A stretch of DNA of 64,000 bases, taken from IMG/VR virus record IMGVR_UViG_3300010389_000001, positions 124,001 to 188,000 of that record, one strand, 5' to 3'. Made by a program: the position numbers and the translations under genes. A model generated the notes under the pieces. It had not been told where the DNA came from. It saw only the letters and a list, made by a program, of their open reading frames with translations, and ran no database searches. Positions 6,874 through 32,024 of this stretch are shown here, piece by piece. How positions within the stretch are numbered: position 1 is the first letter of the stretch; each line of letters starts with the position of its first letter.

Positions 6874-7350
6874 ATGTCTGAACTAGATGATATTTTATTA
6901 AAACTTTCTCAGAAGCAAGAAACGAATCCAACTTACAAAGATCGAATAGAGCTTACCGAAGAAGTTAAGATCAAAAAGGTTGCATTCGATATGGTTAAGG
7001 TTTTCGGAGATAACTATGACGATCTCTGGAGAGTAGAGAAAGAAGGTGAGTCAACGTTCCTAGTTAGAAGCTCACACCCTAGATACGGCGTCGAAGAGGC
7101 TGGAGACTGGTCTGCTCAAAGCAATCATGCATCTAGTGCTGTAACGCTTGCATACAGGGGCGTCCCGATTTGTTCGTTTTCCTCTGATGAATATGGCTTT
7201 TCTAAAGATGATGTTTTTACCTTTAAGACTGCGCTGCTAGATTTGGCGAAAAATGATCCGCTCTTTGTTAACAAGGTTGTTGATGCCCAGCTGGAGGCGA
7301 AGGCAAGCGCTATAAAGCAAGTATTTCCAGATTTATTTAAAAAGAACTAA
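6874..7350 (+). CDS. hypothetical head-module protein
   Basis: 158-aa ORF with AGGAG RBS; IKKVAF motif. Confidence 0.75.
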   Translation: MSELDDILLKLSQKQETNPTYKDRIELTEEVKIKKVAFDMVKVFGDNYDDLWRVEKEGESTFLVRSSHPRYGVEEAGDWSAQSNHASSAVTLAYRGVPICSFSSDEYGFSKDDVFTFKTALLDLAKNDPLFVNKVVDAQLEAKASAIKQVFPDLFKKN

Positions 7351-7365
7351 TTAAGGATAAATAAG

Positions 7366-8925
7366 ATGAATGAAATAAAAAAGATAGCAAGAGAAGCTCA
7401 GAAGGCATTAGACAAGATTGCTAATGGCAAAAAGTATTCTGCAAGCTATGTTTGCGAAAGAGTGGAGCTTGCAAAAGCTAGCAACCCCGGCGACGTAGCC
7501 ATTGGCTATGCAAGAGATATCTTTACGAAAAGGGCATCCACGCAAGAGTTCTTTACCGAAAAAGAAATTTCAGATGTATATAATGCTATATCCGGACTTT
7601 CCGCCGGAAAAAGTGCATTCAGAGAAGTCTTAGGGGATCTAATGACCGATAGCCCGGTTGATTCTGTGAGACAGAAAACCGCAAGCCTAAGCTCAAGAAT
7701 TGCCTATGAAAATGAGCTAAAGCCACTATATGGAGATTCGGAGCTATCTAGGGAGCTGGCAGGAATATTTTCACTAGATAAGAAGGCCTCCTTCTCAGCC
7801 TTGTCCGACAACACTTTGACGAAGGCTGCAAAGTTTGCAAAAGTTCAGCTAACATCACTTGGCTGCCCTCCGAGCAACGTTTCTGTCGTAAAGTCTAATG
7901 AGCATTTCATCCTATGCAATGCCTCCATTGACACTTCGGACTTCACACAGGTAAATGTGCCCATCCCCGTTCAGGTAACGAACGGCATTCCCGAGCTTCC
8001 AAATACATTTATCCAGGATAATGATATTGTAAAGCTTAATAAAGAAAACCTTTATGTTTTTATCAAGGATAAGAATAACCACAAGAAGAAGGCTGCAAGA
8101 GATGGCTTTGTAGGCCAGCGTGCCGCAGGAAGCGTCAGAGTCGATACTCCGGATGTTCCTAAGGAGCTGGAGAGATATGCTGATCTAGACAACAATTTAA
8201 TCGCCGCAGCATCGACGTTCTCTACAAGAGAGGTGTCTAGGGCTACAGCGATTGTTTCCTCCGAGCTTTCTGCCCTTGGCCTAAAGAATGCCCAGGTCAA
8301 GCTGGCCGGCTGTGACGAAAGAAGCCTGCATTATCAGGCGAGCATTCCTTCTCCGAATGGCCAGATGCACGCAGACGTTTGCGTCGATATGCCTAACGGC
8401 TCAGCTGTAATTCCAACCACCTTTAAAGCTGCTGGCGAAACCTATAAGCTAAATAGAGCCGGCCTAAGGTCTGCGATAAGAAACACAGAGGCGGCAGGCC
8501 TGCACAACAAAGTGTCAAGAGAAATTGAGAGCATGGAGAGACTCAACTATTCTCAGCTAATTGGCGAGATGGAGTCAGGAATTGCTAACTCTGATTATAA
8601 GCGAGCAGAAAATGCTCTCTCTGCAATTCAGACTAGATTTGATCCAACCCAGCACCTTGCCGCTCTGGATCATTACTCAAAGCTTCTAAAGCATTCCTCC
8701 ACCGGATCAGACAGAGATGCTCTAATTAAGGCTGCCGTTGAGAGAGGAGATCTCATAAGCCTGCCAACGTCTGTGCAGCTTTATTGTCCAAAACTAGGTC
8801 TGCCGCTCAGCAAGATCGCCTTTGACGAAAAGGGCCGCCCCATCCCCGCTATGAGAGCATTCTCTGCTGGTGATCTAAGTGAGACGGGAGCTATGATCTC
8901 AACTTCGAAGATTTCATTATCATAG
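7366..8925 (+). CDS. hypothetical head-module protein
   Basis: 519-aa ORF; several K-x-A motifs. Confidence 0.8.
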   Translation: MNEIKKIAREAQKALDKIANGKKYSASYVCERVELAKASNPGDVAIGYARDIFTKRASTQEFFTEKEISDVYNAISGLSAGKSAFREVLGDLMTDSPVDSVRQKTASLSSRIAYENELKPLYGDSELSRELAGIFSLDKKASFSALSDNTLTKAAKFAKVQLTSLGCPPSNVSVVKSNEHFILCNASIDTSDFTQVNVPIPVQVTNGIPELPNTFIQDNDIVKLNKENLYVFIKDKNNHKKKAARDGFVGQRAAGSVRVDTPDVPKELERYADLDNNLIAAASTFSTREVSRATAIVSSELSALGLKNAQVKLAGCDERSLHYQASIPSPNGQMHADVCVDMPNGSAVIPTTFKAAGETYKLNRAGLRSAIRNTEAAGLHNKVSREIESMERLNYSQLIGEMESGIANSDYKRAENALSAIQTRFDPTQHLAALDHYSKLLKHSSTGSDRDALIKAAVERGDLISLPTSVQLYCPKLGLPLSKIAFDEKGRPIPAMRAFSAGDLSETGAMISTSKISLS

Positions 8926-8932
8926 GTGCATC

Positions 8933-9421
8933 ATGGCTATAAATAGACTGAGAAAATTAAAATTATATAATAGAATAACAAAGATCGCCGAAGCAGATCA
9001 GCACGGCATCTTCGAAAGCTTTCAGGGCGCTTCCATAGAGGAAAATACCAGAGACAAGTATCTTAGCGAGAAGCATAATACGCCAGTCGACAGAACGACC
9101 GAAGCTCTCTACAACCTTGCTCCCGAGCATGCTGACAGCAATCCCAATACCACTGCCGCACCCAGCGCTCCCCTTTCCACTAGGTATGTACCAGGCCTCG
9201 CAGGAGTTCAATCAAGAAGAATAGGGGATGGGGTCGTCGAGGACCCTCTGACGGGCAAGAAGTTTGATTATAATGAGGGCTTTAAGATTGGGGATCAGGT
9301 ATACAATCCTGGCGACGTTTCCCTTCAGACTAGCTTAACTCATTTTGCAAATCACCTAGATAATATCGGACTTATAAAAGAAGCTGACCTAGTTGATGAA
9401 ATTATCTCTAGCATCAAATAA
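8933..9421 (+). CDS. hypothetical head-module protein with C-terminal helical-hairpin module
   Basis: 162-aa ORF ending ANHLDNIGLIKEADLV. Confidence 0.75.
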   Translation: MAINRLRKLKLYNRITKIAEADQHGIFESFQGASIEENTRDKYLSEKHNTPVDRTTEALYNLAPEHADSNPNTTAAPSAPLSTRYVPGLAGVQSRRIGDGVVEDPLTGKKFDYNEGFKIGDQVYNPGDVSLQTSLTHFANHLDNIGLIKEADLVDEIISSIK

Positions 9422-9444
9422 TATTCTGATTATTAAATTATAAT

Positions 9445-10179: not shown

Positions 10180-10197
10180 AGCTCAACAGGAATTATA

Positions 10198-10458: not shown

Positions 10459-10459
10459 T

Positions 10460-11953
10460 ATGCCTAGAATAAATGATTATTTTAAAAACAAAATAATAAA
10501 CATGAACGAAGAAAGCAAGGACGCACTACTTCCGGTGGCGAAGAGGGCTGCTCACTTAACGGAAATAGGTATATCAAATGATGATGAGCTGGTAAAGTAT
10601 CTTTTCCTAGAGAGAGAGGCTGGTAAAATGAATGTTACTATTACCGACCGCATCGCTTCTGAGATAATAAAAAACTCAAGCGATACTGGAGACATACTTT
10701 ATGGGCTGCTAAAAAGAAAGATTTCAGATAGACAGCTAAAAAAAATCGCTTATCCAAATCCGGGACTTTCCGTTGATAGCCTCAACAAAGAAGTTGACCT
10801 CAACGAGTGGCTTGAGCTGGTCCACAAAATATACAAGGCATGCAAGCGTGGAGAGATGACAAAGCAAAAAGCTTTGGATTTTTATAGTAATAATTTGGAT
10901 AATGAAGAGAAGCAAAGATTTTTAAGATGGTTCGAATATTATAGCTCTGGTCAGCACCTTCAGTATCCAGCCATCAAACACTCAGATTATAAAGGAAAAG
11001 AGATGAAGAAAGAATCTGTATTTCAGTCAGGCTTAATCGGTTCCGGATTTTATGATCAGGATAACAACAGGCCTGGCAGCAGCTTTGGTGGCGGTGAGCC
11101 AAGCGCTAATGGTGGCAGTGCAGATCTAAGCGCCAAAGAAAAGCTCACTGCCTGGAAAAAGGCCATAAACAGAGCATGCAAGAGAATCGATACACTTCTT
11201 AGGGAGGGTGATATACCGTATGACTCTTACTCCCAGATGGCAAAGCACCTATTCGATCTAAGCTCTTTAATCAAGCAGGTTAAGATGGCAAGCACAATGA
11301 GCGATGTTACGCACAGAACTGCAAATATACTTAAGCAAGCTGGGCATCAGGAGCCCGCAAACATTTTGATAAAAATTGCTCAAGAAATATCCGAAGAAAA
11401 TGCCGTTCCGGCAGAGGGCCAGCCGGCAGCGGCAGAAGTTCCGGAGTCCACTCAGCCCGAAGCAGCACCTGTCGAAACTGGGCCAAGTCAGCAGGAGCAG
11501 AAATCTGGAGTAGAGGTGCCGGAACCGGACGCCGTAGAGCCTACAAAGCTTAGAGATATAGAGCCTATTCCCGGTCCGCAACCGGGTGAGTATGAGGCTC
11601 TGGCCGGAAATATAAACCTTGAAGATGCAGCCAAAAAGCTTGACGATGTCGCCGGCATGCTGGCAGATAGAAGAATCATTAGGCAGCTTGCAGAGTTTGA
11701 TATTATGCTTGATAAAATCGGCATCGCATCAATGTTCCCTGAGCTAGCAGAGTCTCAGAGTAAGCTTATTGACGCATTCTCCTATGCCCTTACTCGTGTC
11801 ACCAAGATGATGGGTCAGCTATCCAATGCAAAGACTCTTCTTGAGGCTGGAGGTCCGCTACCCGGCACTGGGGCCTCTGCTGCAATTGAAGCCCCAGAGG
11901 CAGCTCCAGAGGCAGCCCCTGAAGAGGTGGCAGGACAGCCTCCCACTGAGTAA
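10460..11953 (+). CDS. hypothetical head-module protein
   Basis: 497-aa ORF with several K-x-A/S motifs, Pro/Glu linkers and a helical-hairpin module. Confidence 0.8.
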   Translation: MPRINDYFKNKIINMNEESKDALLPVAKRAAHLTEIGISNDDELVKYLFLEREAGKMNVTITDRIASEIIKNSSDTGDILYGLLKRKISDRQLKKIAYPNPGLSVDSLNKEVDLNEWLELVHKIYKACKRGEMTKQKALDFYSNNLDNEEKQRFLRWFEYYSSGQHLQYPAIKHSDYKGKEMKKESVFQSGLIGSGFYDQDNNRPGSSFGGGEPSANGGSADLSAKEKLTAWKKAINRACKRIDTLLREGDIPYDSYSQMAKHLFDLSSLIKQVKMASTMSDVTHRTANILKQAGHQEPANILIKIAQEISEENAVPAEGQPAAAEVPESTQPEAAPVETGPSQQEQKSGVEVPEPDAVEPTKLRDIEPIPGPQPGEYEALAGNINLEDAAKKLDDVAGMLADRRIIRQLAEFDIMLDKIGIASMFPELAESQSKLIDAFSYALTRVTKMMGQLSNAKTLLEAGGPLPGTGASAAIEAPEAAPEAAPEEVAGQPPTE

Positions 11954-13194: not shown

Positions 13195-14265
13195 ATGTCT
13201 AAAAAATATCTGAGACCAAAAACCAAGAGCATGGGAGAAGAAATGAGAAAACAAGCCTACTATCAGGAGTCTTCTTACGCAGAAGATTTTGTTATGGACC
13301 CTGTAAGCTATGCCGAAGATGAGGAGGCTGAGTTCAGCATTCTTGAGGAGGCAATGAGGCAGTTCGGCCAAAAGGATGAAGAAGTTTCTGGCGACGTATT
13401 TCCCACCGGAGATTTTTCTGAAAGTGATTTTTCCGAAGAAGTTGGCGATATGACATTAGGAGAGGCACTCAAGTCATTGACGGACGGCCCAAATGATCTT
13501 GGTGATTTGGCAGAGGAGTTAGAGGATCTCGAAGAGTCTGTGGATGAATTAGTTAAAGAGCATGGAGACGTGCCGATGAAAGAGCTAATTCCTGGATCAG
13601 ATATTTCTGCAGAAGACCTAGAGGATAAAGCAGAGGATGTTGAGACTGACTATGCAAACGATGGTGATCTAACCAAATTTATGGATTATATACAGAGCGA
13701 GTATCCTGCGAATATCCCAGCTCATGATGGCAGAAGTACTACTGGATGCGAGAATGCAATCTATTTCTTAAGCAGGCTAAATTCTGAAATATCTAAGGCG
13801 ATCAAGGCCGATGTTGATAAGGTCCTAGACCTAGCTGGTCTTGAGGAAATCAGAAGCAATATAATGAGAGATGTCATTACTCTTAAGGATCATCTAAAGA
13901 AGCTGGAGAAAAAACTAAAGGATCAGCACTCAAAGACAGCTGACCACGCCGCTCCCCTGTGGACCACGGCAAATGGCGACAGCGTTGATCTGGTAAAGGA
14001 AGCTACGACGCCAAATAATATGGTCATTTGCATTACACCATTTATGCGAGCAATTACTGGAATGATGATTAACGCCCATGTTTCTTCCGGCAAGCCGATG
14101 GAAGAAGTTTATGAAGCTCTAAAAGAGAAGTACGACATAACCGACAGAGAGGAGCTTTCAATTATTCAAATTTGCATGGACAGCGGATTCCCCCTCTTCA
14201 AAGATAGAGGCACTGTTTCCGATGAAAAGCTAAGTGTCGATTTTCTCAGGAATTACCTAGCCTAA
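13195..14265 (+). CDS. acidic hypothetical head-module protein
   Basis: 356 aa, Asp/Glu-rich N-terminal half; TACTAAT upstream at 13151. Confidence 0.8.
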   Translation: MSKKYLRPKTKSMGEEMRKQAYYQESSYAEDFVMDPVSYAEDEEAEFSILEEAMRQFGQKDEEVSGDVFPTGDFSESDFSEEVGDMTLGEALKSLTDGPNDLGDLAEELEDLEESVDELVKEHGDVPMKELIPGSDISAEDLEDKAEDVETDYANDGDLTKFMDYIQSEYPANIPAHDGRSTTGCENAIYFLSRLNSEISKAIKADVDKVLDLAGLEEIRSNIMRDVITLKDHLKKLEKKLKDQHSKTADHAAPLWTTANGDSVDLVKEATTPNNMVICITPFMRAITGMMINAHVSSGKPMEEVYEALKEKYDITDREELSIIQICMDSGFPLFKDRGTVSDEKLSVDFLRNYLA

Positions 14266-19892: not shown

Positions 19893-20428
19893 AAAAGATT
19901 TCGTACAAGAATAAGGAGTACAAATCGAAAGCTCCGGTATCCGGCCCTCTGCCATCTGATATAGGCTCTGACGAGGATTATTCTGCTAATGCTCCAGGGA
20001 TTGGAAGAGGTTTGTCCATGCCGGGTGAAAAGGCTATACCGCTAAAGGATACGGATGAAAGCCGTGTCTTTTTAAAGAAAAAGGAACCGGAAGTTCCGCC
20101 TCCAGATCATAAGCGCATGCTGGATGTGTTTGTTGATCTTGCAGATAATCTGGATAAAAGTGGAGAATATGAGCTTGCTTCATTTGCGGATTTTCTTATA
20201 AGCAAAATAGCGCAGCAGAGGGACGCAGATTATGAGGCTTTGCTAAAAGACCTTATCGTAAAAATATCAAATTCTGATTTATTAAAGAAAAATAATTTAA
20301 TGATTAAAGTCGGAAGGTTATATAATGAAAAATTCTTAAGCCTTTATGATGAGCTTGGAGAGCAGGCCGCGCACAGAGAGGCTTATCAGTCGGCATTCAA
20401 ATTGGTTGAGCAGGAACTTGGAGTTTAA
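19889..20428 (+). CDS. hypothetical head-module protein with helical-hairpin module
   Basis: 179 aa; MKKISY start; ADNLDKSGEYELASFA. Confidence 0.75.
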   Translation: MKKISYKNKEYKSKAPVSGPLPSDIGSDEDYSANAPGIGRGLSMPGEKAIPLKDTDESRVFLKKKEPEVPPPDHKRMLDVFVDLADNLDKSGEYELASFADFLISKIAQQRDADYEALLKDLIVKISNSDLLKKNNLMIKVGRLYNEKFLSLYDELGEQAAHREAYQSAFKLVEQELGV

Positions 20429-23331: not shown

Positions 23332-26300
23332 ATGTTTAAGAAAGTATGTTTTTCTCCCGGAAGCGATGTAAAAACGCATTCTAACGAGGAAATTAAGGCT
23401 AATCCAGAAATTGTAAGCAGATTTACAAAGCTTGCAAAAAATCTAAAAAGTATAGCCCCGAAGTCTGATGACTTTCTTTATTTCTCAATCATCTTCTTAA
23501 AGGCGGCAGAGTCTGCCCTGCTAGATGAAAAAGGAAGTATAAAGAAGGTTGGCAGCGAAGATGCGTGGGGATTCTTTGATGAAAACTGGAATTGGCACGG
23601 AAATGTTAAGCCTCATAGAAATAACAATAAAGATATTTTCCCGGAAGCACAGCTAAAGTTAGCCACGCCACTTTGGATTGGCAAACCACTGTGCAGGGAT
23701 CACGAGTCAAGCTCTGTTGATGGAATTCGCGGAATTATTCTAGACACTTATTACGACGAGAAGTACAAGCAGGTTGTGGGTCTTTGTGCCCTAGATAAGG
23801 TAAATTACCCTTCTCTTGCGGCCAAGGTGCAGTCTGGACTTGTTCGCTATGGATCTATGGGTACTGCCGTAGAAACATCAATATGTACTGAGTGTTATAA
23901 TCGTGCCAGAACTCAAGACGAATATTGTCAGCACGTCCTAACTCGCACCGCTCATGGCGAAATTAATGTTGGCCTAAAGCCAATAGAGTACAGCCTTGTT
24001 GTTACTCCTGCTGAGCCAGGTGCTGTTCTTCTAAAGTGTATAGCTTCACTAAATGAATATCGCCAAGAGTTTGTTAACTATGGCGTTGATGACGTGCCCG
24101 AGATGCTTGGAAAACTTTCTGAAAAACAAGCTCAACATCTAGAGGGAATAATGAAGACTGCCTGTGGCGATGATGGATGCTCAATAACTGATCGCAAAAG
24201 AATTGTCACAAGCTTTTTGAGTAACAATGGCTTGATGAAGTCAGCAGAGTTTACACCTGAAGAATTAAGAAATCTAGCTGAAACCGCACAAACAGCTTCT
24301 GAACTTCCTGATAACATCGGGGGCCCACTTTCCAAAAGCGTTCAGGATCTTATTTCAAATGATGAATCTCTTACTTCTGGTGAGCCGGCCGCTCCCCACT
24401 TAGATGCAGCGTCTACCAGCATAGGTCTCCTTGGTAATGCTGCTCCGTCCGAAGGGAATTCGGACTTTCAAACCGATGGAGACCTGTTAGCACAAACTCT
24501 TCCGCCCGAGCAAAATCTTGTGGCGGTAGAAGCAAATAACAAAAACGTTAATGTCAGAAATGGCTCTGACAATGACGTTGATTTTGATAATTTAACAATT
24601 AGTTCAATTTTGGAGGACATCATGAACGAATCAAGGTTAAAGAAGAGAGCTGAGCTTCGCCGCCGTATTGCTTACATGCAGGGTGGAGCCGAAGGCGCAG
24701 AGCCCAACACCTATAAGAGTGAGCCGTTTGCCTGGGACCACGACAAGCAGATGCATCAGGAGCATTCTGGAGACACCGGAATGATGGCTGACGATGCTGC
24801 AGTCAAGGAAAAGCTTAGCCGAGCAGAGCTAAATGAAAGAAGAATTAAGAGAATGGCTTACATGCAGGGTGGCTCAGAGGGAAGAGAGCCCAACACTTTT
24901 AAGAGCGAAGATTTCGATAGAAATCAGGACAAGCAGATGCATCAGGACGGCAATATGGGCGGCGACAAGGGAGCGTTCCCCGGTGATGTCGAGAAGAAAA
25001 CGATGATGAGCAGGGCTGATGACGCCGCACCAATGAGAAAGGCGGCTTATGATGGCCCGTCACTAAGCACACGCTTCCTAGTGAAGAGAAGCGGTGCCGG
25101 CTCTGTTGATAGAGCAAACTCTGTTTTTCAGGTATTTGCAGGAGACAAGAAGGTTATCCAGGCTAAGGCATCCGAGATTTTTGGTCCGGAGCTAAACGAC
25201 AACTGGGATTGGCTAAGAAGCCGTGAGTACGGCAAAGAGGTATGCAGCCAGATCAGAGAAGCTGGCCTTGCTACTGTAGCAAACCTTCTTAAGTCAGCCC
25301 AGGAGCTAGAGCTTGACGCTCCTGCTGGCGAGGCAGGCGCGGAGGCACCTCCCATGGAGATGGAGGCCCCTGAGCTTCCTCCGATGGATGATGCACCGAT
25401 GGACGACGCTCCGATGGACGACGGTGCAGGGGAAGAGGAAGAAAATCCTGCAGACGCCATTGATGGCAGACTTGCCACGATAGAGGACGCCATTGACGAG
25501 ATTAGAGATCTCGTAGATGAGCTTCAGAGTGAGACCGGAAATGTGGATGTAAACGTATTCACCGGGAAGGGCGGAGAGGATATGGTCGATACCGAGATGA
25601 CAGCCCTATCCAGAGAGCTTTTGAATGGCCTAAAGGTTGCGCAGGCAAAGCTTGACACATCCGCTGATGAGCTAGCCATGGTTGGCGAGACATACGAGAA
25701 TATATCCAAGCTCTCTTCCGCTCAGGTCAAGGAGTTTAGAAAGCTCGCAAATGAGGCAATCAGAGACGCAGATCAGCTCTCCGGTGAGGCAAGAGGCCTT
25801 GTAAGCCTTGCTACTGCAATGAAGGCGGATATGGCCCCCACGATGGAGGACGCCGCATCTTACGCTGAGGACATGGAGAACGAGGCTGATTGCGCCGCTG
25901 CTGACGACACCGAGGAAAGCATGGCAGACGACGGTGGAGTTGCAGAGCTTATCGCTGCAGCCATGGAGCTTCGCAAGGAAAGAAGAGAGGGCCTTCTAAA
26001 GCAGTCTGAGGACAGAGTTCTTTCGCAGCGCAAGCAGGCGAGAGAGGCAATTCTCAAGTCAGCAATGGAAGTGGTAAATGAGGATGAGGCAGAGGACAAG
26101 GTAATTGAAGAGGAGCCCACTCCAGATCCTAAGGCTGACGACGATGCCACGGCCGCCGACGCGCTTGAGAGTGTGGCATCAAACGATGGTGCTAGCGCGC
26201 TCAAAGAGGCTCTTGCTGCTAACATGAAGAAAGCAGAGGAGAGCGATGCAAGAGAAGCTTACAGAACCAAGCTAAGAAGAGCTTATGATGTTGGCCTAGA

Positions 26301-26544
26301 TATGCAGAGAAAGGGCCTTCTTCCCACGACGAAGACTGCTCTGGACCGCCAAGTTGATGAGATCATGGACTTCGACGACAAGGCTTTCGAGTCATTCAAG
26401 AGAAGCATTGCTAGCGCAAGACCCGTAAGAAACGTCAAGGTTGCATCAGACCTAGGCGGTGTAAACATTGGAGTTGAGAGCGATGCAGGCCAGCAGGCAT
26501 CATCACCCATGACCGCAGACGCCCTCTCATCTCTCTGGGAGTAA
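23332..26544 (+). CDS. prohead maturation protease (assemblin/HK97-type) fused to scaffold
   Basis: NNNKDIF...GKPLCRDH (H124)...GSMG (S175)...EYSLVVTPAEPGA, then long acidic coiled-coil region; upstream of the capsid genes. Confidence 0.8.
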   Translation: MFKKVCFSPGSDVKTHSNEEIKANPEIVSRFTKLAKNLKSIAPKSDDFLYFSIIFLKAAESALLDEKGSIKKVGSEDAWGFFDENWNWHGNVKPHRNNNKDIFPEAQLKLATPLWIGKPLCRDHESSSVDGIRGIILDTYYDEKYKQVVGLCALDKVNYPSLAAKVQSGLVRYGSMGTAVETSICTECYNRARTQDEYCQHVLTRTAHGEINVGLKPIEYSLVVTPAEPGAVLLKCIASLNEYRQEFVNYGVDDVPEMLGKLSEKQAQHLEGIMKTACGDDGCSITDRKRIVTSFLSNNGLMKSAEFTPEELRNLAETAQTASELPDNIGGPLSKSVQDLISNDESLTSGEPAAPHLDAASTSIGLLGNAAPSEGNSDFQTDGDLLAQTLPPEQNLVAVEANNKNVNVRNGSDNDVDFDNLTISSILEDIMNESRLKKRAELRRRIAYMQGGAEGAEPNTYKSEPFAWDHDKQMHQEHSGDTGMMADDAAVKEKLSRAELNERRIKRMAYMQGGSEGREPNTFKSEDFDRNQDKQMHQDGNMGGDKGAFPGDVEKKTMMSRADDAAPMRKAAYDGPSLSTRFLVKRSGAGSVDRANSVFQVFAGDKKVIQAKASEIFGPELNDNWDWLRSREYGKEVCSQIREAGLATVANLLKSAQELELDAPAGEAGAEAPPMEMEAPELPPMDDAPMDDAPMDDGAGEEEENPADAIDGRLATIEDAIDEIRDLVDELQSETGNVDVNVFTGKGGEDMVDTEMTALSRELLNGLKVAQAKLDTSADELAMVGETYENISKLSSAQVKEFRKLANEAIRDADQLSGEARGLVSLATAMKADMAPTMEDAASYAEDMENEADCAAADDTEESMADDGGVAELIAAAMELRKERREGLLKQSEDRVLSQRKQAREAILKSAMEVVNEDEAEDKVIEEEPTPDPKADDDATAADALESVASNDGASALKEALAANMKKAEESDAREAYRTKLRRAYDVGLDMQRKGLLPTTKTALDRQVDEIMDFDDKAFESFKRSIASARPVRNVKVASDLGGVNIGVESDAGQQASSPMTADALSSLWE
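24670..24946 (+). repeat. two ~30-aa coding repeats, 186 nt apart, in protease-scaffold
   Basis: AYMQGGAEGAEPNTYKSE...DKQMHQ and AYMQGGSEGREPNTFKSE...DKQMHQ. Confidence 0.9.
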
Positions 26545-26553
26545 GGAGATATC

Positions 26554-27093
26554 ATGCATAGTTTAAAATCAAATGGCGATTTCTTAGCGCAGGAATTTGC
26601 AAAAATTCTTGGAGTAAAGCAGGATGGCATTGAAAAGTCAGCAAGCCTAGAGGGCGCTCCTGTCGACGCAACCGTTGAAGCGGCAGCTGCTGATAGTGCT
26701 CTTGAGAACTCTGCGGAAGACAAAAGCCTTGAGGATGACATTGCTGATATGCTAATCGAGCCCACAGATGAAGGGGCAAATATGGCCTCTGACTCTCTCG
26801 ATGAAGCGGTAGATGAGCTTAATGCTTACGACGGGCTAGACGACAAGCATGCAAAGATTATGCTTGGCCTAAACAAGATCGCAACAAGTCTCCGAGGAAA
26901 GGACGAGTCATTTGCTGCTGATGTTGTCGAGGCAACAGCCCTTAGCATCATGGACGATCTAAAGAAGGAAGCTGCAAGAAGTAACTTTGTATGTGACCAG
27001 CTCAGCAAAATTGCTGCAGATCTAGATGCTTCTGGAGATGATTTTTCTGCTGATATGGTAAGAGTAACTTTGTCTAGAATAAAGAACTCATAA
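26554..27093 (+). CDS. acidic head-module protein with two helical-hairpin modules
   Basis: KIATSLRGKDESFAADVV and KIAADLDASGDDFSADMV. Confidence 0.8.
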   Translation: MHSLKSNGDFLAQEFAKILGVKQDGIEKSASLEGAPVDATVEAAAADSALENSAEDKSLEDDIADMLIEPTDEGANMASDSLDEAVDELNAYDGLDDKHAKIMLGLNKIATSLRGKDESFAADVVEATALSIMDDLKKEAARSNFVCDQLSKIAADLDASGDDFSADMVRVTLSRIKNS

Positions 27094-27952: not shown

Positions 27953-28345
27953 ATGAAAAATCTATGGAGCAAAGAGGATCTGGCTAACTTCAATAATAGC
28001 GAAGTTTTCTCTGAATTAGAGGCAAGAGTTTTAGATACAATAAAGCGAGCCGACATTCTTTCCGCAAAGATTGCGCAGGAGACTGCCCAGCAGAAGGCTG
28101 ACGCCTTTAAAAATCTGGCTAATTCTGCAGAATTAGCCGCTAGCTCCGTTGAAAAGCTTAACAAAGCTATTATGTCTGCTGATGACGAAGAGCTTGATGA
28201 TGAAGATGATGCGGCATTTGATGGCATTGTGGAAGAGCTAACTTCTATGGCAAAGCTTGCAATAGATCAGGGAGATTATAAGCTTGCCTACAGAATAGAG
28301 CGCACAATAGATGAGATCTTGGAGCCAGAAGTAAAATGCGAATAA
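27953..28345 (+). CDS. hypothetical head-module protein
   Basis: 130 aa, acidic linker, C-terminal helical hairpin. Confidence 0.75.
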   Translation: MKNLWSKEDLANFNNSEVFSELEARVLDTIKRADILSAKIAQETAQQKADAFKNLANSAELAASSVEKLNKAIMSADDEELDDEDDAAFDGIVEELTSMAKLAIDQGDYKLAYRIERTIDEILEPEVKCE

Positions 28346-30324
28346 ACAAGATTTCACAGTCTGATTCCTTTGATCTTTATGCAAAAACTCTTTCTTCTTT
28401 TTTGGCAAAGCAAGATAGCTCTGAAGATCTCGTTAAGACGGCCAGCCTTTTCGGCGAGGTGCTCGGACTAATCGGTTCAAGCGGAAAAAATGTTCTTAAA
28501 GCCCTCACTTCCGGTGAATCAGCAAAGGCCTTAAAGGCAGGAGGGGATGTAACTTTTGTCAAAGTTTTAGAAGATGCTGATATCGCGGCCGATGAAGCAG
28601 TCGCAGCAGCAAAAAGCGCATATCCAGATGAAGCTTTCGAACTTTTTTTCAAAGACGAAGAAACTCTTAAAAACTTATATAAATATGAATCATTATTAAA
28701 GGCAAGGGATGCTTATACCGATGAAGCAGTAATAAAAAGCATTAATGATCAGATTGAAGAGTTAAGCAGAGCATTAGAGGATAAACTACCGTTAAATAAT
28801 CCCGAATTGCTAGACCTTTTTAAAAAAGCAAGGCTAAAATATACTCCATCTGAAATGCCTGGAAATGTTGATGACTTGAGGAGGGGTCTCGGGCTGATGG
28901 AAGATAGCCCAGTCCCTACCCCCGGGGCAGGCAAAGCAATTGCCGAAGAAGCGTCTGAAGAAGCAGCGCAAAAAAGCATGAAGGCAGCAGTTGATGCGGG
29001 AGATCTTGAAGGAGCCAATAAGATTGGCGTAGAACTAGCCAAGGCCAAGGAAGCGCATCTAAAAAAGATAGATGAAGCACTTAAGGATCTAAAGAAAAAA
29101 TGGTGGAGAGGAGATCTGAAAACACCAGAGTATAACAAGCTGGCCGACATGTATAAGGCGCAAGCAAAAAATCTGCAAGGATCTACAGACTCCCTTCTGT
29201 CAACGCTCGGAGGTTGGGCGAAAAACCTAGCGGCTTTCAGCATTCTCAAAAATCTAGCTTTAGCCGCAGGACTGATCTTTGCTGGCAAGGCTGGCTACGA
29301 CTGGTATACCAGCGATGAAGAAGCAGATTTGGAAGAAAATCTGGAACAGAGATCAAAGCCGGAATTTGACGAAGAAGTCGTAACGATAGCTCCAGAAGAA
29401 TTTAAGGCAAAAAGAGCCTTTGATAAAGATGATAATCAGTTAATGCAAGAAGCTATAAGGGCTGCAGATGGAGAAACTCTTGAGTATATCAAAAATTTAT
29501 ACAAGAAAGAATTGGCCCTAGAGCTTCCGGAAGAATTCGAAGGTATGACTCACGTATTTATGACCCCCAAGGTGGGTGGCGCAAAAATTCAGGACCCAAG
29601 ATTTAGAGAGGGCTACCTGAGAGCCCTGATTGATTACCTAAAAACAAATGCAGGAGCAGAAACTTACGGTATTTATCTGAGCAGCGAGAGGTCCCCTCAG
29701 CATGCTCTAAATGCGGCTGCTGAAAAAGCAATTAATCTACAGCTTTGGAAAAAGAATTTATTCAGAAATCGCGGAAGGAGATGGCTGAAGGGCAAAAGGC
29801 TAAAAGGAGGTCCGGGAATGCTAGGTTCAGAGAGAGCAGACGTACCAAGAAAAGTCAGGAGGGCTCATGCTGATAATCCAGATAGACTTCAAAAACTATC
29901 TCATTTTAGAGATGTTTCACTAGAAACTACTAATAATCATTCAATTAATGATGTTAATCTGCTAAAAAAGGCAGATGAAATGTCAAAGTCTTACCACAAG
30001 GATGCCGTAAAGGATCTGGCCGGGGAAGACAAAGCACTCCGAGAATATTTTACAGGTCTAGGAAGACTGTATGATGCTGAATCGGAAAAAAGAAATCCAG
30101 ATTACGAGGAGCTAAACAAACTTCATGATGAAACAGGCCGAGATTTAACTCTTTCGGCGCATCCAAAAGCAATCAGAGTATCTGATGCAATGGGTAACGG
30201 CGGATTGGTTGAAAATGGTTTGGAGCAAAAAGAGAAGTTAGAGGAAGTGGCGCTAAGCGCACCGACTGGCAACTTTACATCTAGATACGCTAAGCTGAAA
30301 AACTTGTTGATTAAATCAAAGTAA
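28336..30324 (+). CDS. helical head-module protein, candidate internal/ejection protein
   Basis: 662 aa; hydrophobic stretch at ~29227-29286; K-x-A/S motifs. Confidence 0.7.
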   Translation: MRINKISQSDSFDLYAKTLSSFLAKQDSSEDLVKTASLFGEVLGLIGSSGKNVLKALTSGESAKALKAGGDVTFVKVLEDADIAADEAVAAAKSAYPDEAFELFFKDEETLKNLYKYESLLKARDAYTDEAVIKSINDQIEELSRALEDKLPLNNPELLDLFKKARLKYTPSEMPGNVDDLRRGLGLMEDSPVPTPGAGKAIAEEASEEAAQKSMKAAVDAGDLEGANKIGVELAKAKEAHLKKIDEALKDLKKKWWRGDLKTPEYNKLADMYKAQAKNLQGSTDSLLSTLGGWAKNLAAFSILKNLALAAGLIFAGKAGYDWYTSDEEADLEENLEQRSKPEFDEEVVTIAPEEFKAKRAFDKDDNQLMQEAIRAADGETLEYIKNLYKKELALELPEEFEGMTHVFMTPKVGGAKIQDPRFREGYLRALIDYLKTNAGAETYGIYLSSERSPQHALNAAAEKAINLQLWKKNLFRNRGRRWLKGKRLKGGPGMLGSERADVPRKVRRAHADNPDRLQKLSHFRDVSLETTNNHSINDVNLLKKADEMSKSYHKDAVKDLAGEDKALREYFTGLGRLYDAESEKRNPDYEELNKLHDETGRDLTLSAHPKAIRVSDAMGNGGLVENGLEQKEKLEEVALSAPTGNFTSRYAKLKNLLIKSK

Positions 30325-30388
30325 AACCTAGACAATATATTCAATGGTTGAATATATTAAACTTTAGAATAATTCAGGAGAATTAAAA

Positions 30389-30997
30389 ATGGCTTTAAAA
30401 CTATTAAATCCAGGCCTAAGACCCCTCGGCATGTTCGACCTCAATGATGACGACGCCGGCCAGCTAGTTGGCGGCGAGTATGTTGAGCTTCAGCAGGACG
30501 ATTTTGCCACGGAGGCTTATGCCGCAGATGTTGGCCAGCAGGCCGATGCCACTGGCATGGTTAACTTCACCAGAAAGGCGAGAGCTAGCGGTGGCGGAGT
30601 GCTTGGCGGACTCGCTGATGAGGGTGGCGATGAGTACGGCACGCTATTCGGCTCACTAATCGGCCAGAATGCTGGTCGCTCCACGCAGTACGGCCTAGTC
30701 AATGGCGCCGTCGTTCTTGGTCCAGAGACTGATCGCGCATCTGGCAAGGTAACAGTATGGGCAACTCCCGGTCTTTACGGTGTAACGGATCAGGATGCTA
30801 CCCTTGATGCTGCAAATGCAAACGCTGACCTCGCTGCAACGGGTGCCGGCCTACTAACCACCGCTGTTGGCGAAAAGGTCGCAACTTATGTAGCTGCAAT
30901 GTCAGACACATCACTCGTTTCCACCACGGCAACCGCCGCTGGTGAGACTGCAACCACTGAGTACCACGCGGTATTCTTTATGGCCAACGTAAACTAA
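30389..30997 (+). CDS. probable capsid decoration/minor capsid protein (paralog 2)
   Basis: Immediately upstream of MCP; AGGAG RBS; codon style like MCP. Confidence 0.6.
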   Translation: MALKLLNPGLRPLGMFDLNDDDAGQLVGGEYVELQQDDFATEAYAADVGQQADATGMVNFTRKARASGGGVLGGLADEGGDEYGTLFGSLIGQNAGRSTQYGLVNGAVVLGPETDRASGKVTVWATPGLYGVTDQDATLDAANANADLAATGAGLLTTAVGEKVATYVAAMSDTSLVSTTATAAGETATTEYHAVFFMANVN

Positions 30998-31013
30998 GGC
31001 ATAGGAGGATAAA

Positions 31014-32024
31014 ATGTCAAATCTATTCAATACACATGGTGAAATCAATGCCTCCAATGTCACCGAGGCACTATCACAGATTGTTAAGTACGCCTCCATC
31101 ATTGAGGATCTACAGCCCTCCAGCTCCGCTCAGGCTGCTGCTCCCTCACTAAATGATGGCCAGCGCGACGAGATGATCAAGCAGGCGCTTATGACCCAGG
31201 AGGGCAAGATTGCTCTCGGTCAGGCAATGGCTAACCCAATCCGTAGAAACCTTGACTACCAGGGCGTTGCTCGTAAGGCTCTCGTAGTTGACCCTCTACC
31301 CCAGGGCGCTCTACCCGTCTACGATCGTGATATCGACGTAGCTGCTGTTGTTGTTTCCAGCAACGGTGCTGCTCCCGAGTCACGCGTCTTCGGCGACAGA
31401 GTAACTGTTCCTGAGTTTGAGGTTGTTTCTAACCCGACCGTCCGTATCGCTGAGGTCAAGCGTCGTCGTTTCAACGTAATCGACCGTGCTCAGCAGAAGG
31501 CTCGTCAGGAGATCCAGGCGCAGGAGGATGCGAACGTATTCTCAGCTCTCACCTTCGCTGGCGACAGCACCCTTGGTGGCGAGAACGCAGCTGTAGCTCT
31601 TGATCCTGCCGCTGCCGGCTCCCTCAACAAGGACGGCCTCGTCAATCTCAAGAGACAGATTGATCGTTGGGACCTAGTTACTTCCAAGTACTTCATGAAC
31701 ATCAACGAGTTCACTGACATTCTCACCTGGGAATCTGCCGGTGGCACAAACTCACAGGTTGATCCCGTCACGCAGCGCGAGCTTCTACAGACCGGCCTAT
31801 ACGGCCACGTCTTTGGCGCCGATATCATCGTCTCCAAGGTCGTTCCTGTAAATCGTGCTTTCGCTACGGCCGACCCCGAGTTCGTAGGTGTCATGCCTGT
31901 ACGTCAGGACATCGAGGTTCTACCCGCCGACGAGCCCAAGCAGCTTAAGCTTGGTTGGGTTGTCAACGAGATCATCGGTGTTGGCATCGTCAACCCCCGT
32001 GGTGTTGCAACGGGTACCATCTAA
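31014..32024 (+). CDS. major capsid protein (HK97 fold)
   Basis: 336 aa, AGGAGG RBS, terminator downstream; PIRRNLDYQGVARK, RVTVPEFEVVSNP, GLYGHVFGADIIVS. Confidence 0.85.
   Translation: MSNLFNTHGEINASNVTEALSQIVKYASIIEDLQPSSSAQAAAPSLNDGQRDEMIKQALMTQEGKIALGQAMANPIRRNLDYQGVARKALVVDPLPQGALPVYDRDIDVAAVVVSSNGAAPESRVFGDRVTVPEFEVVSNPTVRIAEVKRRRFNVIDRAQQKARQEIQAQEDANVFSALTFAGDSTLGGENAAVALDPAAAGSLNKDGLVNLKRQIDRWDLVTSKYFMNINEFTDILTWESAGGTNSQVDPVTQRELLQTGLYGHVFGADIIVSKVVPVNRAFATADPEFVGVMPVRQDIEVLPADEPKQLKLGWVVNEIIGVGIVNPRGVATGTI

What the first reader, a model, noticed from the sequence alone, without database searches (positions are those of the whole stretch)
6874..32024. Shared hydrophobic-x-K-x-A/S motif across the head module: candidate maturation cleavage code
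Seen: dozens of copies in unrelated proteins, often at domain edges: portal MIKSA-S (A65), MCP IVKYA-S (A27), protease-scaffold (IMKTA, LMKSA, MRKAA, LLKSA, ILKSA, NVKVA-S), IEKSA-S, LVKTA-S, ILKTA-S, ISKKA-S, QVKMA-S, LIKIA-Q, LKKEA-Q, MRKQA-Y, LVKEA-T, IIKQA-F. It looks much rarer in sheath, tube and fibre. Known: T4 gp21 and phiKZ gp175 cut many head proteins at short Glu motifs; herpes assemblin, which shares the fold inferred here, cuts at Ala-Ser. Inference: a P3-Lys/P1-Ala specificity that processes capsid, portal and many internal proteins; I do not know it to be described.
Basis: partly seen in the sequence, partly recalled or inferred. Interest (0 to 1): 0.7.

Follow-up and report, generated by a model that had tools for sequence, protein, structure and literature searches.

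The report
Predicted capsid-protease cutting motif, jumbo phage
The head genes of this giant marine phage, a distant relative of Bacillus phage G, are peppered with a conserved short motif (hydrophobic-x-Lys-x-Ala) that is most likely the cutting signal of the phage's own capsid-maturation protease, a specificity I could not find described, although no cut has been observed.

Summary
In the 23 head-module ORFs, [ILMV]xKxA occurs 45 times against 12.1 expected from within-protein shuffles (0 of 500 shuffles reach it). K-x-A is the most over-represented gapped residue pair. Control patterns, the tail module, the upstream genes and the rest of the 232-kb genome show no K-x-A excess.

About half of the copies are conserved across up to 65 distinct orthologues per gene (160 related IMG/VR loci). 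At these sites only P5, P3 and P1 are kept, while P4, P2 and the surroundings drift.

ORF 23332-26544 is an N-terminal protease with the T4 gp21 / herpes assemblin fold (Z 10.0 and 7.5-8.5; H124 and S175 invariant), fused to about 800 aa of scaffold. Conserved sites follow the protease domain, and one lies 32 aa from the C-terminus, as in herpesvirus UL26.

In an AlphaFold model of ORF 20771-23029, the two conserved sites fall in the two sharpest internal confidence dips, at domain borders. The three non-conserved copies lie in well-folded parts.

Phage G, which can be grown in culture, shows the same enrichment. So do 112 distant protease-scaffold fusions (1090 copies against 342 expected).

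Cleavage itself, and whether the cut follows Ala or Lys, remain inferred. I rate it a new variant of a known kind.

The parts
23332..26544 (+). Protease-scaffold fusion gene (1070 aa). Residues ~36-262 form the prohead serine protease; residues ~280-1070 are the scaffold.
   Evidence: phrog_18299 head maturation protease, E 6e-11. 33% identity to phage G gp19. The C-terminal part matches phage G gp21. AF2 model pLDDT 81, with T4 gp21 5jbl at Z 10.0 and herpes proteases at Z 7.5-8.5. H124, S175, C185, C188 and C199 are invariant in 36 sequences.
23422..23439 (+). FTKLA|K (aa 31-36), candidate N-terminal self-processing site of the protease
   Evidence: Full motif kept in 98% of 41 orthologues. 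Aligned with LVKTA|A of phage G gp19. A35 is nearly invariant in distant homologues.
24148..24165 (+). IMKTA|C (aa 273-278), candidate release site just after the protease domain (analogue of the herpes R site)
   Evidence: Kept in 80% of orthologues. Lies in a lower-confidence stretch after the fold. Phage G gp19 has LEKVA|S and LLKIA|S at the same place.
24232..24249 (+). LMKSA|E (aa 301-306), second site after the protease domain
   Evidence: P5 95%, K 83%, A 51% with A/S exchange.
24637..24654 (+). LKKRA|E (aa 436-441), scaffold-internal site
   Evidence: Kept in 93% of orthologues.
25285..25302 (+). LLKSA|Q (aa 652-657), scaffold-internal site
   Evidence: Kept in 88%; local identity 0.41; P1' Gln 100%.
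25735..25752 (+). FRKLA|N (aa 802-807), scaffold-internal site
   Evidence: Kept in 76%.
26431..26448 (+). NVKVA|S (aa 1034-1039), site 32 aa before the scaffold C-terminus (analogue of the herpes M site)
   Evidence: K and A are invariant in all aligned orthologues and are followed by DLGG. 108 of 112 distant fusions have K-x-[AS] in the last 70 aa. Phage G gp21 has IKKTA|KSAPRSLGG.
31014..32024 (+). Major capsid protein (336 aa, HK97 fold)
   Evidence: phrog_2522, E 2e-73. Residues 46-332 align to the solved phage G gp27, PDB 6wkk, E 7.5e-92.
31080..31097 (+). IVKYA|S (aa 23-28), candidate removal site of a 27-aa N-terminal peptide of the MCP
   Evidence: Kept in 98% of 58 distinct orthologues; one clade has IVRYA|S. 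The N-terminal ~43 aa have no counterpart in phage G gp27.
16678..18360 (+). Portal protein (560 aa)
   Evidence: phrog_16240, E 2e-47. 32% identity to phage G gp14.
16858..16875 (+). MIKSA|S (aa 61-66), candidate portal N-terminal processing site
   Evidence: K 83%; P1 A/G; P1' Ser 83% in 65 orthologues. By eye, phage G portal NIQRKMA|SPSV matches NMIKSA|SIVSP.
20771..23029 (+). 752-aa head-module protein with a DUF192 domain (aa 248-346); candidate multi-domain internal head protein
   Evidence: Pfam PF02643, E 3e-21. AF2 model pLDDT 78.
21980..21997 (+). ILKTA|S (aa 404-409), interdomain site
   Evidence: P5 98%, K 91%, A 93%, with local identity only 0.19. Lies in the one internal segment longer than four residues with pLDDT below 50 (403-411). 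K406 and A408 are nearly invariant.
22517..22534 (+). IEKRA|G (aa 583-588), interdomain site before the C-terminal helical bundle
   Evidence: P5 100%, K 98%, A 87%, local identity 0.26. pLDDT dips to 58 in block 581-590.
13990..14007 (+). LVKEA|T (aa 266-271) in ORF 13195-14265
   Evidence: Kept in 98% of 50 orthologues; local identity 0.37; P4 14%.
10736..10753 (+). LKKIA|Y (aa 93-98) in ORF 10460-11953
   Evidence: Kept in 95% of 42 orthologues; local identity 0.30.
11366..11383 (+). LIKIA|Q (aa 303-308) in ORF 10460-11953
   Evidence: Kept in 86% with A/S exchange; local identity 0.32; P1' Gln 100%.
20198..20215 (+). ISKIA|Q (aa 104-109) in ORF 19889-20428
   Evidence: Kept in 92% of 38 orthologues.
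26629..26646 (+). IEKSA|S (aa 26-31), N-terminal site of ORF 26554-27093
   Evidence: Kept in 72%; local identity 0.22; variants IVKTA|Q, ITKKA|S, LNKTA|S.
26869..27018 (+). Three further copies in ORF 26554-27093: LNKIA|T, LKKEA|A and LSKIA|A (aa 106-155)
   Evidence: Kept in 68%, 88% and 96% of 25 orthologues.
8975..8992 (+). ITKIA|E (aa 15-20), N-terminal site of ORF 8933-9421
   Evidence: Kept in 77% of 31 orthologues; local identity 0.31; P4 6%, P2 16%.
9371..9421 (+). C-terminal copy of the ~30-aa leader-like module (…HLDNIGLIKEADLVDEIISSIK), containing LIKEA|D
   Evidence: Matches the HMM of the paralogue leaders, E 6.6e-9. Motif kept in 68%.
8722..8739 (+). LIKAA|V (aa 453-458) in ORF 7366-8925
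   Evidence: Kept in 96% of 25 orthologues.
6970..6987 (+). IKKVA|F (aa 33-38) in ORF 6874-7350
   Evidence: Kept in all 12 orthologues under the search pattern. Two of the variants printed carry Arg at the preceding residue, and the alignment there has a gap.
28429..28446 (+). LVKTA|S (aa 32-37), N-terminal copy in ORF 28336-30324
   Evidence: Present. Only 7 distinct orthologues were recovered, so conservation was not assessed.

Best explanation
The motif is the recognition and cutting signal of the phage's own prohead protease.

The enzyme. It is the N-terminal ~260 residues of ORF 23332-26544. This part is a serine protease of the T4 gp21 / herpes assemblin fold (His124, Ser175), made as one polypeptide with about 800 residues of scaffold.

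Proposed sequence of events inside the assembled prohead:
- The protease cuts itself free, at FTKLA|K, IMKTA|C and LMKSA|E.
- It cuts the scaffold into fragments, at LKKRA|E, LLKSA|Q and FRKLA|N.
- It clips the scaffold's last 32 residues, at NVKVA|S.
- It removes a 27-residue N-terminal peptide from the capsid protein and about 65 residues from the portal.
- It cuts at least eight other head-module proteins, after short N-terminal peptides or in linkers between domains.

How the site is read. The substrate is read as an extended strand, so alternate side chains face the enzyme: P5 Leu/Ile/Phe/Met, P3 Lys, P1 Ala (rarely Ser or Gly). P1' is preferably Ser, Gln or Tyr.

Shown here: enrichment, head specificity, position-specific conservation, the protease fold with its invariant His and Ser, and the location of two conserved sites at domain borders.

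Inferred: that the bonds are cut, which bond is cut, and the order of events.
For: 1. Enrichment only in head genes. There are 45 copies against 12.1 expected, and K-x-A is the top gapped pair. Most control patterns, the tail genes and the upstream genes are flat.

2. Behaviour of a short linear motif in orthologues from 160 IMG/VR loci. K in the motif is kept at a median of 0.80 against 0.42 for other Lys in the same proteins (p = 3e-4). For Ala it is 0.79 against 0.29 (p = 9e-6). P4, P2 and the surroundings vary. In contexts below 40% local identity the whole pattern is retained 0.48 of the time, against 0.00-0.23 for 13 control patterns.

3. Substitutions at the 24 conserved sites are what a shallow S1 pocket would allow: P1 is A 88%, S 5%, G 3%; P3 is K 94%.

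4. The conserved positions are i, i+2, i+4, which is strand periodicity and the same P3-x-P1 layout as the known motifs. Given K-x-A, information content peaks at P5 and P1'.

5. Protease identity. AF2 model with Z 10.0 to T4 gp21 and 7.5-8.5 to herpes proteases; H124 and S175 invariant.

6. Polyprotein logic. Conserved sites lie right after the protease domain and 32 aa from the C-terminus. The latter recurs in 108 of 112 distant homologues and in phage G gp21.

7. In 112 distant fusions there are 1090 copies against 342 expected, about 10 per protein. This fits a scaffold that must be broken up.

8. In the AF2 model of ORF 20771-23029, the two conserved sites fall at 403-411 (pLDDT below 50) and 581-590 (pLDDT 58), the two sharpest internal confidence dips. 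The three non-conserved copies are in well-folded parts.

9. The MCP's N-terminal ~43 residues, which hold the site at 27/28, have no counterpart in the solved phage G capsid protein.

10. Phage G head genes show the same excess: 24 copies against 7.4 expected, 0 of 500 shuffles. Bxz1-type mycobacteriophage head genes show a weaker [KR]-x-A excess: 71 against 46.1, 0 of 300.

11. TerL, which established knowledge of tailed-phage assembly places outside the prohead interior, has no K-x-A at all.
Against: - No proteomic or biochemical observation of any cut exists here, and none was found in the searchable literature.
- AF2 draws some candidate sites as helices (aa 25-37 and 264-275 of the protease protein), although at modest confidence.
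- The motif is also part of a conserved ~30-aa helical module (LANxLDxxGLxKEAxxLD). There, Leu and Ala could simply be one face of a helix.
- About half of the copies in the window are not conserved.
- The letters do not fix the scissile bond.
- Ralstonia phage RSL1, which has a related protease, shows no enrichment, so the specificity is not a property of the whole protease family.
- The counts in the 112 homologues are not independent events, because the proteins are related.
Confidence: 0.62

Rival explanations
1. Same protease and same signal, but read in a T4-like register. The hydrophobic residue is P3, Lys is P1, and the bond after Lys is cut (hydrophobic-x-Lys, then the cut, then x-Ala). 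Ala then sits at P2'.
For: T4 gp21 is the best structural match (Z 10.0). From established knowledge, it cuts after [Leu/Ile]-x-Glu; a charge-reversed P1 would give exactly hydrophobic-x-Lys. Many acidic residues are invariant in the protease domain (D101, E105, D123, D138, D142, D155, E210, E219), so an acidic S1 pocket is possible.
Against: The Ala position tolerates only Ser and Gly. That is typical of a P1 pocket and unusual for P2'. The residue after Ala carries clear preferences (Ser, Gln, Tyr), while the residue right after Lys is variable. Ala followed by Ser matches assemblin sites. Arg rarely replaces Lys in this clade (1%).
Confidence: 0.15
2. The motif is a docking or targeting signal that is not cut. 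It would be a short peptide by which head proteins bind the scaffold, the inner capsid wall or the protease, so that they are taken into the prohead.
For: The motif sits in a ~30-aa module found at N-termini, at C-termini or as internal repeats of many otherwise unrelated proteins. This includes a paralogue family elsewhere in the genome, which looks like a portable targeting tag. AF2 predicts helices at some copies.
Against: - A pure docking role does not explain the copies after the protease domain and near the scaffold C-terminus, which mirror known self-cleavage sites.
- It does not explain the site 27 residues into the capsid protein, nor about 10 copies per scaffold.
- It does not explain the placement of two conserved sites in unstructured linkers.
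- The i, i+2, i+4 conservation is strand-like rather than helix-like.
- In T4 and the phiKZ group, targeting peptides are themselves removed at the protease motif, so the two roles are not exclusive.
Confidence: 0.13
3. The excess is a by-product of composition or structure. On this view, amphipathic helices rich in Leu, Lys and Ala in scaffold-like proteins, together with duplication of one helical module, produce the excess without any specific function for the five-residue pattern.
For: L-x-K is mildly enriched genome-wide. Head-module proteins are helix-rich. One clear module copy lies in the window.
Against: - Within-protein shuffles control for composition.
- Seven sibling patterns with the same helical logic (hxRxA, hxExA, hxKxL, hxKxG, hxKxE, hxxKA, hKxxA) are flat. 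The reversed pattern and hxKxS show only smaller excesses.
- Only one window copy is a confident module hit. Removing all weak module hits still leaves about 45 copies against 13.8 expected.
- The pattern is retained where the surrounding sequence has diverged below 40% identity.
Confidence: 0.05

Closest known systems
Bacteriophage T4 prohead protease gp21 (MEROPS S77) and its [Leu/Ile]-x-Glu sites
   Same: Best structural match of the protease domain (5jbl, Z 10.0, 128 aligned residues). One enzyme processes the capsid protein, the portal-proximal and internal proteins and the scaffold at a short P3-x-P1 motif. N-terminal targeting peptides are removed, and the scaffold is broken into fragments (established knowledge; PMC9026906, PMC5694885).
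   Different: T4 needs Glu at P1. Here the fixed residues are Lys and Ala, plus a hydrophobic P5. In T4 the scaffold (gp22) is a separate gene. Sequence identity is about 21% over the aligned core, and no Pfam protease family is matched.
phiKZ gp175 / SPN3US gp245 (MEROPS S80), with the Ser/Ala/Gly-x-Glu motif
   Same: Jumbo phages in which many head proteins are cut at a short motif. The cuts mostly release N-terminal propeptides, the propeptides carry several motif copies, and Ser is preferred at P1' (PMC10052503, PMC13282480).
   Different: A different motif (Glu at P1), a different sequence family, and no fusion to the scaffold.
Herpesvirus assemblin (UL26-type protease-scaffold polyprotein, MEROPS S21)
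   Same: Same fold (Z 7.5-8.5). Same gene layout: protease at the N-terminus and scaffold at the C-terminus of one polypeptide. One site releases the protease and one lies a few tens of residues from the C-terminus. Cleavage between Ala and Ser fits the commonest P1/P1' pair here (established knowledge for assemblin; for this phage).
   Different: Assemblin reads Val/Leu at P3, not Lys. This phage has many more sites and many more substrates. The phage enzyme carries a Cys-rich insert (C185, C188, C199). The third catalytic residue was not identified.
Bacillus (Lysinibacillus) phage G: gp19 protease, gp21 scaffold, gp27 capsid protein
   Same: The nearest cultured relative found in the phage-record searches. 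MCP 53% identical, protease 33%, portal 32%. The same motif excess is present in its head genes, including after the protease domain, near the scaffold C-terminus and at the portal N-terminus.
   Different: In phage G the protease and the scaffold are separate genes, with gp20 between them. Its capsid protein lacks the N-terminal extension that carries the site here. No cleavage motif for phage G was found in the papers I could read.

Membership tests
Prohead serine proteases of the assemblin / T4 gp21 fold (MEROPS clan SH) | Characteristic beta-barrel fold shared by T4 gp21 and the herpesvirus proteases | tested here: met
   AF2 model (pLDDT 81) against the PDB. 5jbl Z 10.0, rmsd 3.4 over 128 residues. 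VZV, PRV and HSV proteases Z 7.5-8.5. Foldseek probability 0.99 for 5jbl. MCE-domain proteins score 6-7, so the margin over background is moderate.
Prohead serine proteases of the assemblin / T4 gp21 fold (MEROPS clan SH) | Conserved catalytic His and Ser | tested here: inconclusive
   H124 (in D-H) and S175 (in S-M-G) are invariant in 36 homologues down to 40% identity, and also in phage G gp19. I did not obtain a residue-by-residue superposition on the catalytic residues of gp21, and I did not identify the third triad member.
Prohead serine proteases of the assemblin / T4 gp21 fold (MEROPS clan SH) | Match to a curated sequence family of prohead proteases | tested here: inconclusive
   No Pfam-A family at E <= 0.01 and no PDB sequence hit with the profile. 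PHROG phrog_18299 'head maturation protease' matches at E 6e-11.
Prohead serine proteases of the assemblin / T4 gp21 fold (MEROPS clan SH) | Proteolytic activity on head proteins | not testable with these tools
   Needs enzyme assays or virion proteomics.
Motif-directed head maturation systems (T4 gp21; phiKZ gp175 / SPN3US gp245) | Short motif over-represented in head proteins and absent or at chance level elsewhere | tested here: met
   Head 45 vs 12.1 expected with [ILMV] at P5, or 49 vs 13.8 when Phe is also allowed. Tail 11 vs 9.7, upstream 4 vs 3.8. K-x-A in the rest of the genome is 274 vs 263.
Motif-directed head maturation systems (T4 gp21; phiKZ gp175 / SPN3US gp245) | Glu at P1 | tested here: not met
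   hxExA is not enriched (10 vs 12.8). The fixed residues are Lys and Ala. So this works like those systems but with a different specificity.
Motif-directed head maturation systems (T4 gp21; phiKZ gp175 / SPN3US gp245) | Mature virion proteins that begin after the motif | not testable with these tools
   No proteomic data for this clade were reachable. Gonzalez et al. 2020 is not held, and no supplement is held for the 2025 phage G paper.
Herpesvirus UL26-type protease-scaffold polyprotein | Protease and scaffold in one reading frame | tested here: met
   One 1070-aa ORF. The N-terminus matches phage G protease gp19 and the C-terminus matches phage G scaffold-region gp21. More than 100 homologues of 900-1600 aa have the same layout.
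Herpesvirus UL26-type protease-scaffold polyprotein | Release site after the protease domain and maturation site near the C-terminus | tested here: met
   Met at the level of conserved candidate sites only. IMKTA|C is kept in 80%. In NVKVA|S, K and A are invariant, 32 aa from the end. K-x-[AS] is present in the last 70 aa of 108 of 112 distant fusions. Cutting was not shown.
Herpesvirus UL26-type protease-scaffold polyprotein | Common descent with the herpesvirus gene (orthology) | not tested
   Only the fold and the layout were compared. Protease-scaffold fusions also occur in other phages (for example P2 gpO, from established knowledge), so the layout may be convergent.

The most novel reading that the evidence does not exclude
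The five-residue signal is half of a two-part address system. The other half is a portable ~30-residue helical tag (LANxLDxxGLxKEAxxLDxxIKKA). The tag is attached to the N- or C-terminus of otherwise unrelated proteins, including a family of at least eight paralogues elsewhere in this genome. It loads them into the prohead, and the embedded hydrophobic-x-Lys-x-Ala sites then let the protease cut the cargo free. If so, the motif and the tag together would identify the internal and ejected head proteins of phage G and of hundreds of uncultured jumbo phages from sequence alone. They would also give a T4-CTS-like handle for loading chosen proteins into very large capsids.
Probability: 0.3. Interest if true: 0.7.

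Novelty: new variant of a known kind. Interest (0 to 1): 0.6.

Why it matters
Maturation by one protease that reads a short motif is well known for T4 and for the phiKZ group, and in both the key residue is Glu. A Lys/Ala-based code in the phage G lineage would be a third specificity on the same fold. This protease family has more than 1,200 clusters at E <= 0.001 in public metagenomes.

Practical uses:
- It would let annotators mark propeptides, mature ends and likely internal or ejected head proteins in jumbo-phage genomes where most head genes have no known function.
- It would explain how an 800-residue scaffold fused to its protease is dismantled.
- It can be tested directly, because phage G is in culture and its virions have already been analysed by mass spectrometry.

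Tried and rejected
- A megablast of the head region against 50,697 phage records found nothing. Relatives were reached only at the protein level.
- Pfam found no family for the protease-scaffold or for most head proteins.
- A profile search of PDB sequences with the protease alignment gave only chance hits.
- A complex prediction of the protease domain (aa 36-262) with MCP residues 1-60 gave 'no answer' (score 0.02). This is neither for nor against binding.
- The phage G capsid paper that reports processing (Gonzalez et al. 2020, PMC7316594) is not held. The 2025 phage G multi-omics paper has no held supplement. The phage G tail paper and the 2017 jumbo-capsid paper give no cleavage data.
- Full-text searches for 'K-X-A' or 'KxA' together with prohead or protease terms, and for jumbo-phage cleavage motifs, returned only the Glu-type motifs.
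- I considered a general amphipathic-helix effect and rejected it on the control patterns.
- I considered that duplication of the leader-like module explains the excess, and rejected it. Only one confident module copy lies in the window.
- I judged the second MCP copy (MIKQA|L, aa 54-59) to be structural rather than a site. It lies in highly conserved sequence, and by eye it corresponds to LISKAL in phage G, which does not fit the motif.
- Ralstonia phage RSL1 shows no K-x-A or R-x-A excess, so the code is clade-specific.

Full report
**What the window is.** The window is bases 124001-188000 of a 232.5-kb IMG/VR virus record estimated to be 68% complete. Nearly all genes are on the + strand. 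PHROG profiles identify the following:
- the large terminase, 14903-16675;
- the portal, 16678-18360;
- a 1070-aa protein whose N-terminal part matches head-maturation proteases, 23332-26544;
- the major capsid protein, 31014-32024;
- the tail sheath, 55664-58939.

There is no nucleotide-level relative among 50,697 phage records. At the protein level the nearest cultured phage found is Bacillus (Lysinibacillus) phage G: MCP 53% identical, portal 32%, protease 33%. The clade is large. 409 capsid-protein and 309 portal relatives were found in IMG/VR, and 1,282 protease clusters at E <= 0.001 in the metagenome protein library.

- In the 23 ORFs between 6874 and 32024, [ILMV]xKxA occurs 45 times against 12.1 +/- 3.3 expected when each protein is shuffled on its own (z 9.9; 0 of 500 shuffles). 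With Ser at P1' the count is 8 against 1.0.
- Seven sibling patterns that would share any helical or compositional bias are at expectation: hxRxA, hxExA, hxKxL, hxKxG, hxKxE, hxxKA and hKxxA. The reversed pattern (22 vs 12.2) and hxKxS (24 vs 11.7) show smaller excesses.
- Without any prior, K-x-A is the most over-represented of all residue pairs at gaps 0-3 in the head set (94 vs 53.9). It is at expectation in the other 245 ORFs of the genome (274 vs 263).
- The tail module has 11 copies against 9.7 expected, and the upstream genes 4 against 3.8. The head still has 40 against 12.3 when the protease-scaffold is left out.
- TerL and the sheath have none.

**Is it functional?** I collected orthologues of each head gene from 160 related loci, with up to 65 distinct sequences per gene and identities down to about 30%. 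About half of the copies behave as a short linear motif: P5, P3 and P1 are kept at 0.8-1.0, while P4, P2 and the neighbourhood drift.
- ILKTA|S in ORF 20771: 0.98 / 0.91 / 0.93 at a local identity of 0.19.
- LVKEA|T in ORF 13195: 0.98 / 0.98 / 0.98 at a local identity of 0.37.
- LKKIA|Y and LIKIA|Q in ORF 10460, ISKIA|Q in ORF 19889, LSKIA|A in ORF 26554 and ITKIA|E in ORF 8933 behave the same way.
- Lys inside the motif is kept at a median of 0.80 against 0.42 for other Lys of the same proteins (Mann-Whitney p = 3e-4). For Ala it is 0.79 against 0.29 (p = 9e-6).
- Where local identity is below 0.4, the whole pattern is retained 0.48 of the time, against 0.00-0.23 for thirteen control patterns.
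- At the 24 best sites, P1 is Ala 88%, Ser 5%, Gly 3%. P3 is Lys 94%. P5 is Leu, Ile, Phe or Met, and almost never Val. P1' is Ser 31% and Gln 13%.

The other half of the copies are not conserved. Examples are MRKQA-Y, ISKKA-S, QVKMA-S, MRKAA and ILKSA. I take these as chance or structural.

**The enzyme.** Pfam does not recognise ORF 23332-26544.
- An AlphaFold model of residues 1-300, built on 36 homologues (pLDDT 81), matches T4 gp21 best (5jbl, Z 10.0, 128 residues). Herpesvirus proteases follow at Z 7.5-8.5.
So are Cys185, Cys188 and Cys199 of a Cys-rich insert.
- The rest of the protein is scaffold. Its C-terminal part matches phage G gp21, which is a separate gene there.

**The layout mirrors a protease-scaffold polyprotein that processes itself.**
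- Conserved sites lie before the fold (FTKLA|K, kept in 0.98; aligned with LVKTA|A in phage G).
- Two sites lie just after the fold (IMKTA|C, 0.80; LMKSA|E). Phage G gp19 has LEKVA|S and LLKIA|S at the same place.
- Several sites lie inside the scaffold.
- One site lies 32 residues before the C-terminus (NVKVA|S). Its Lys and Ala are invariant in all aligned orthologues, and it is followed by DLGG.
- A K-x-[AS] in the last 70 residues is present in 108 of 112 distant fusions. Phage G gp21 has IKKTA|KSAPRSLGG.
- Across those 112 fusions, which are below 58% identical to this protein in the protease domain, the motif occurs 1090 times against 342 expected. That is about ten per protein, with Gln, Ser and Tyr preferred after Ala. 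Given K-x-A, information content peaks at P5 and P1'.

This is what one expects of a scaffold that must be cut up to leave the shell, as in T4. The counts are not independent, since the proteins are related.

**Are the sites accessible?** In an AlphaFold model of the 752-aa ORF 20771-23029 (pLDDT 78), the two conserved sites coincide with the two sharpest internal confidence dips.
- Residues 403-411 (pLDDT below 50) lie between two domains.
- Residues 581-590 (pLDDT 58) lie just before the C-terminal helical bundle.
- The three non-conserved copies, at residues 96, 200 and 525, lie in well-folded parts.

In the capsid protein the site lies 27 residues from the start. The first ~43 residues have no counterpart in the solved phage G capsid protein: 6wkk, 280 residues, aligns to residues 46-332 here.

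**Breadth.**
- Phage G head genes (gp2-gp27) show the same excess: K-x-A 60 vs 33.0, and [ILMV]xKxA 24 vs 7.4, both 0 of 500 shuffles. Many copies lie near N-termini, in gp9, gp13, gp20, gp4 and the portal.
- Head genes of the Bxz1-type mycobacteriophage ScottMcG show a weaker [KR]-x-A excess (71 vs 46.1, 0 of 300). Rhodococcus phage E3 shows a hint of R-x-A.
- Ralstonia phage RSL1 shows nothing.

The code therefore belongs to a clade, not to the whole protease family.

**A related feature outside the window.** At least eight paralogues (genome 33283-42327 and 69333-70463) share a 36-residue N-terminal leader, M[LI]K[DE]L[IV][KR]LANxLDxxG[LF]xKEADxLDx[IV]IxKxA. The leader carries up to three motif copies and is followed by unrelated sequence.
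- The same ~30-residue module closes window ORF 8933-9421.
- It gives 76 hits in ORFs of the related loci: 22 N-terminal, 19 C-terminal and 35 internal, in some ORFs as two or three repeats.
- It looks like a portable targeting tag with built-in release sites, in the manner of the T4 capsid-targeting sequence.

It is also the main reason to keep a docking role in mind. In a helix, the Leu and Ala of L-x-K-x-A would lie on one face.

**Mechanism and its rivals.** My best reading (0.62) is that the motif is the cutting signal of the prohead protease, read on an extended strand with P5, P3 and P1 facing the enzyme, and cut after Ala. The rivals are:
- the same signal cut after Lys, in the T4 register with the charge reversed (0.15);
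- a docking signal that is not cut (0.13);
- a structural or compositional by-product (0.05).

The restriction of the Ala position to Ala, Ser and Gly, and the preferences right after it, favour a cut after Ala. Nothing in the sequence proves it. A complex prediction gave no verdict.

**Comparison with what is known, and novelty.** The system works like T4 gp21 ([Leu/Ile]-x-Glu) and like phiKZ gp175 / SPN3US gp245 (Ser/Ala/Gly-x-Glu; PMC10052503, PMC13282480). It is laid out like the herpesvirus UL26 protease-scaffold with its release and maturation sites. It fails the defining Glu-at-P1 feature of the phage systems and the Val/Leu-at-P3 feature of assemblin.

I found no description of a Lys/Ala motif for phage G or any relative in the searchable literature. 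The one paper likely to bear on it could not be read.

I rate it a new variant of a known kind, with interest 0.6. It is testable at once, because phage G is in culture.

Noticed in passing
G000:C1:33283-42327 and 69333-70463 (outside the window; fetched in part as L163 and L164); window 9371-9421: A family of at least eight paralogues shares a 36-aa N-terminal leader (LANxLDxxGLxKEAxxLDxxIxKxA) followed by unrelated sequence. The same ~30-aa module ends window ORF 8933-9421. It gives 76 hits (N-terminal, C-terminal or internal repeats) in ORFs of the related IMG/VR loci. It is a candidate capsid-targeting tag.
   Followed up: partly
protein P0005 (relative of window 23332-26544); also L136:5297-9550: In some relatives the protease gene carries an insertion of about 375 aa near residue 97-100 of the protease domain. 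In P0005 the insertion has Intein_splicing, Hint and LAGLIDADG matches, so it is an intein inside the prohead protease.
   Followed up: partly
window 23884-23940 (aa 185-203 of ORF 23332-26544): A Cys-rich insert (CxxC…CxH; C185, C188 and C199 invariant, also in phage G gp19) sits inside the protease fold between the catalytic Ser and the last strands. It may be a zinc-binding knuckle. I do not know of one in T4 gp21 or assemblin.
   Followed up: no
window 6349-6798: A small ORF with a sigma-70 region 4 match lies directly upstream of the head module. Phage G also has a sigma factor gene (gp3) next to its terminase gene, upstream of its head genes. It may be a late-gene regulator.
   Followed up: no
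window 11953-12714 and 20771-23029: Two enzyme-like domains lie inside the head module. One is a poly(A) polymerase/CCA-adding 'head' nucleotidyltransferase domain; that ORF has no motif copy. The other is a DUF192 domain inside the 752-aa protein that carries two conserved candidate cleavage sites.
   Followed up: no
window 58994-60739: A 581-aa HNH/homing-endonuclease-like ORF follows the tail sheath gene directly.
   Followed up: no
window 45791-50350 and 50350-53973: Two very large adjacent ORFs (1519 and 1207 aa) both carry [IV]SKTAA at residue 91. This suggests similar N-termini, so they may be paralogues. Neither has a PHROG match.
   Followed up: no
L152:10001-12136 and L154:7978-10113 (portal relatives): In two related contigs the portal match spans about 2.1 kb instead of 1.6-1.7 kb, which suggests an insertion in the portal gene. 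Pfam found no domain in the L152 stretch.
   Followed up: partly
L167 (Mycobacterium phage ScottMcG, record positions 35250-49926) and L165 (Rhodococcus phage E3): Head genes of these actinophages, which share the protease and capsid-protein families, show a weaker [Lys/Arg]-x-Ala excess. Both capsid proteins start with …GSGLGRFA|KAS at residues 11-16. The specificity may extend to cluster C mycobacteriophages, with Arg partly replacing Lys.
   Followed up: partly
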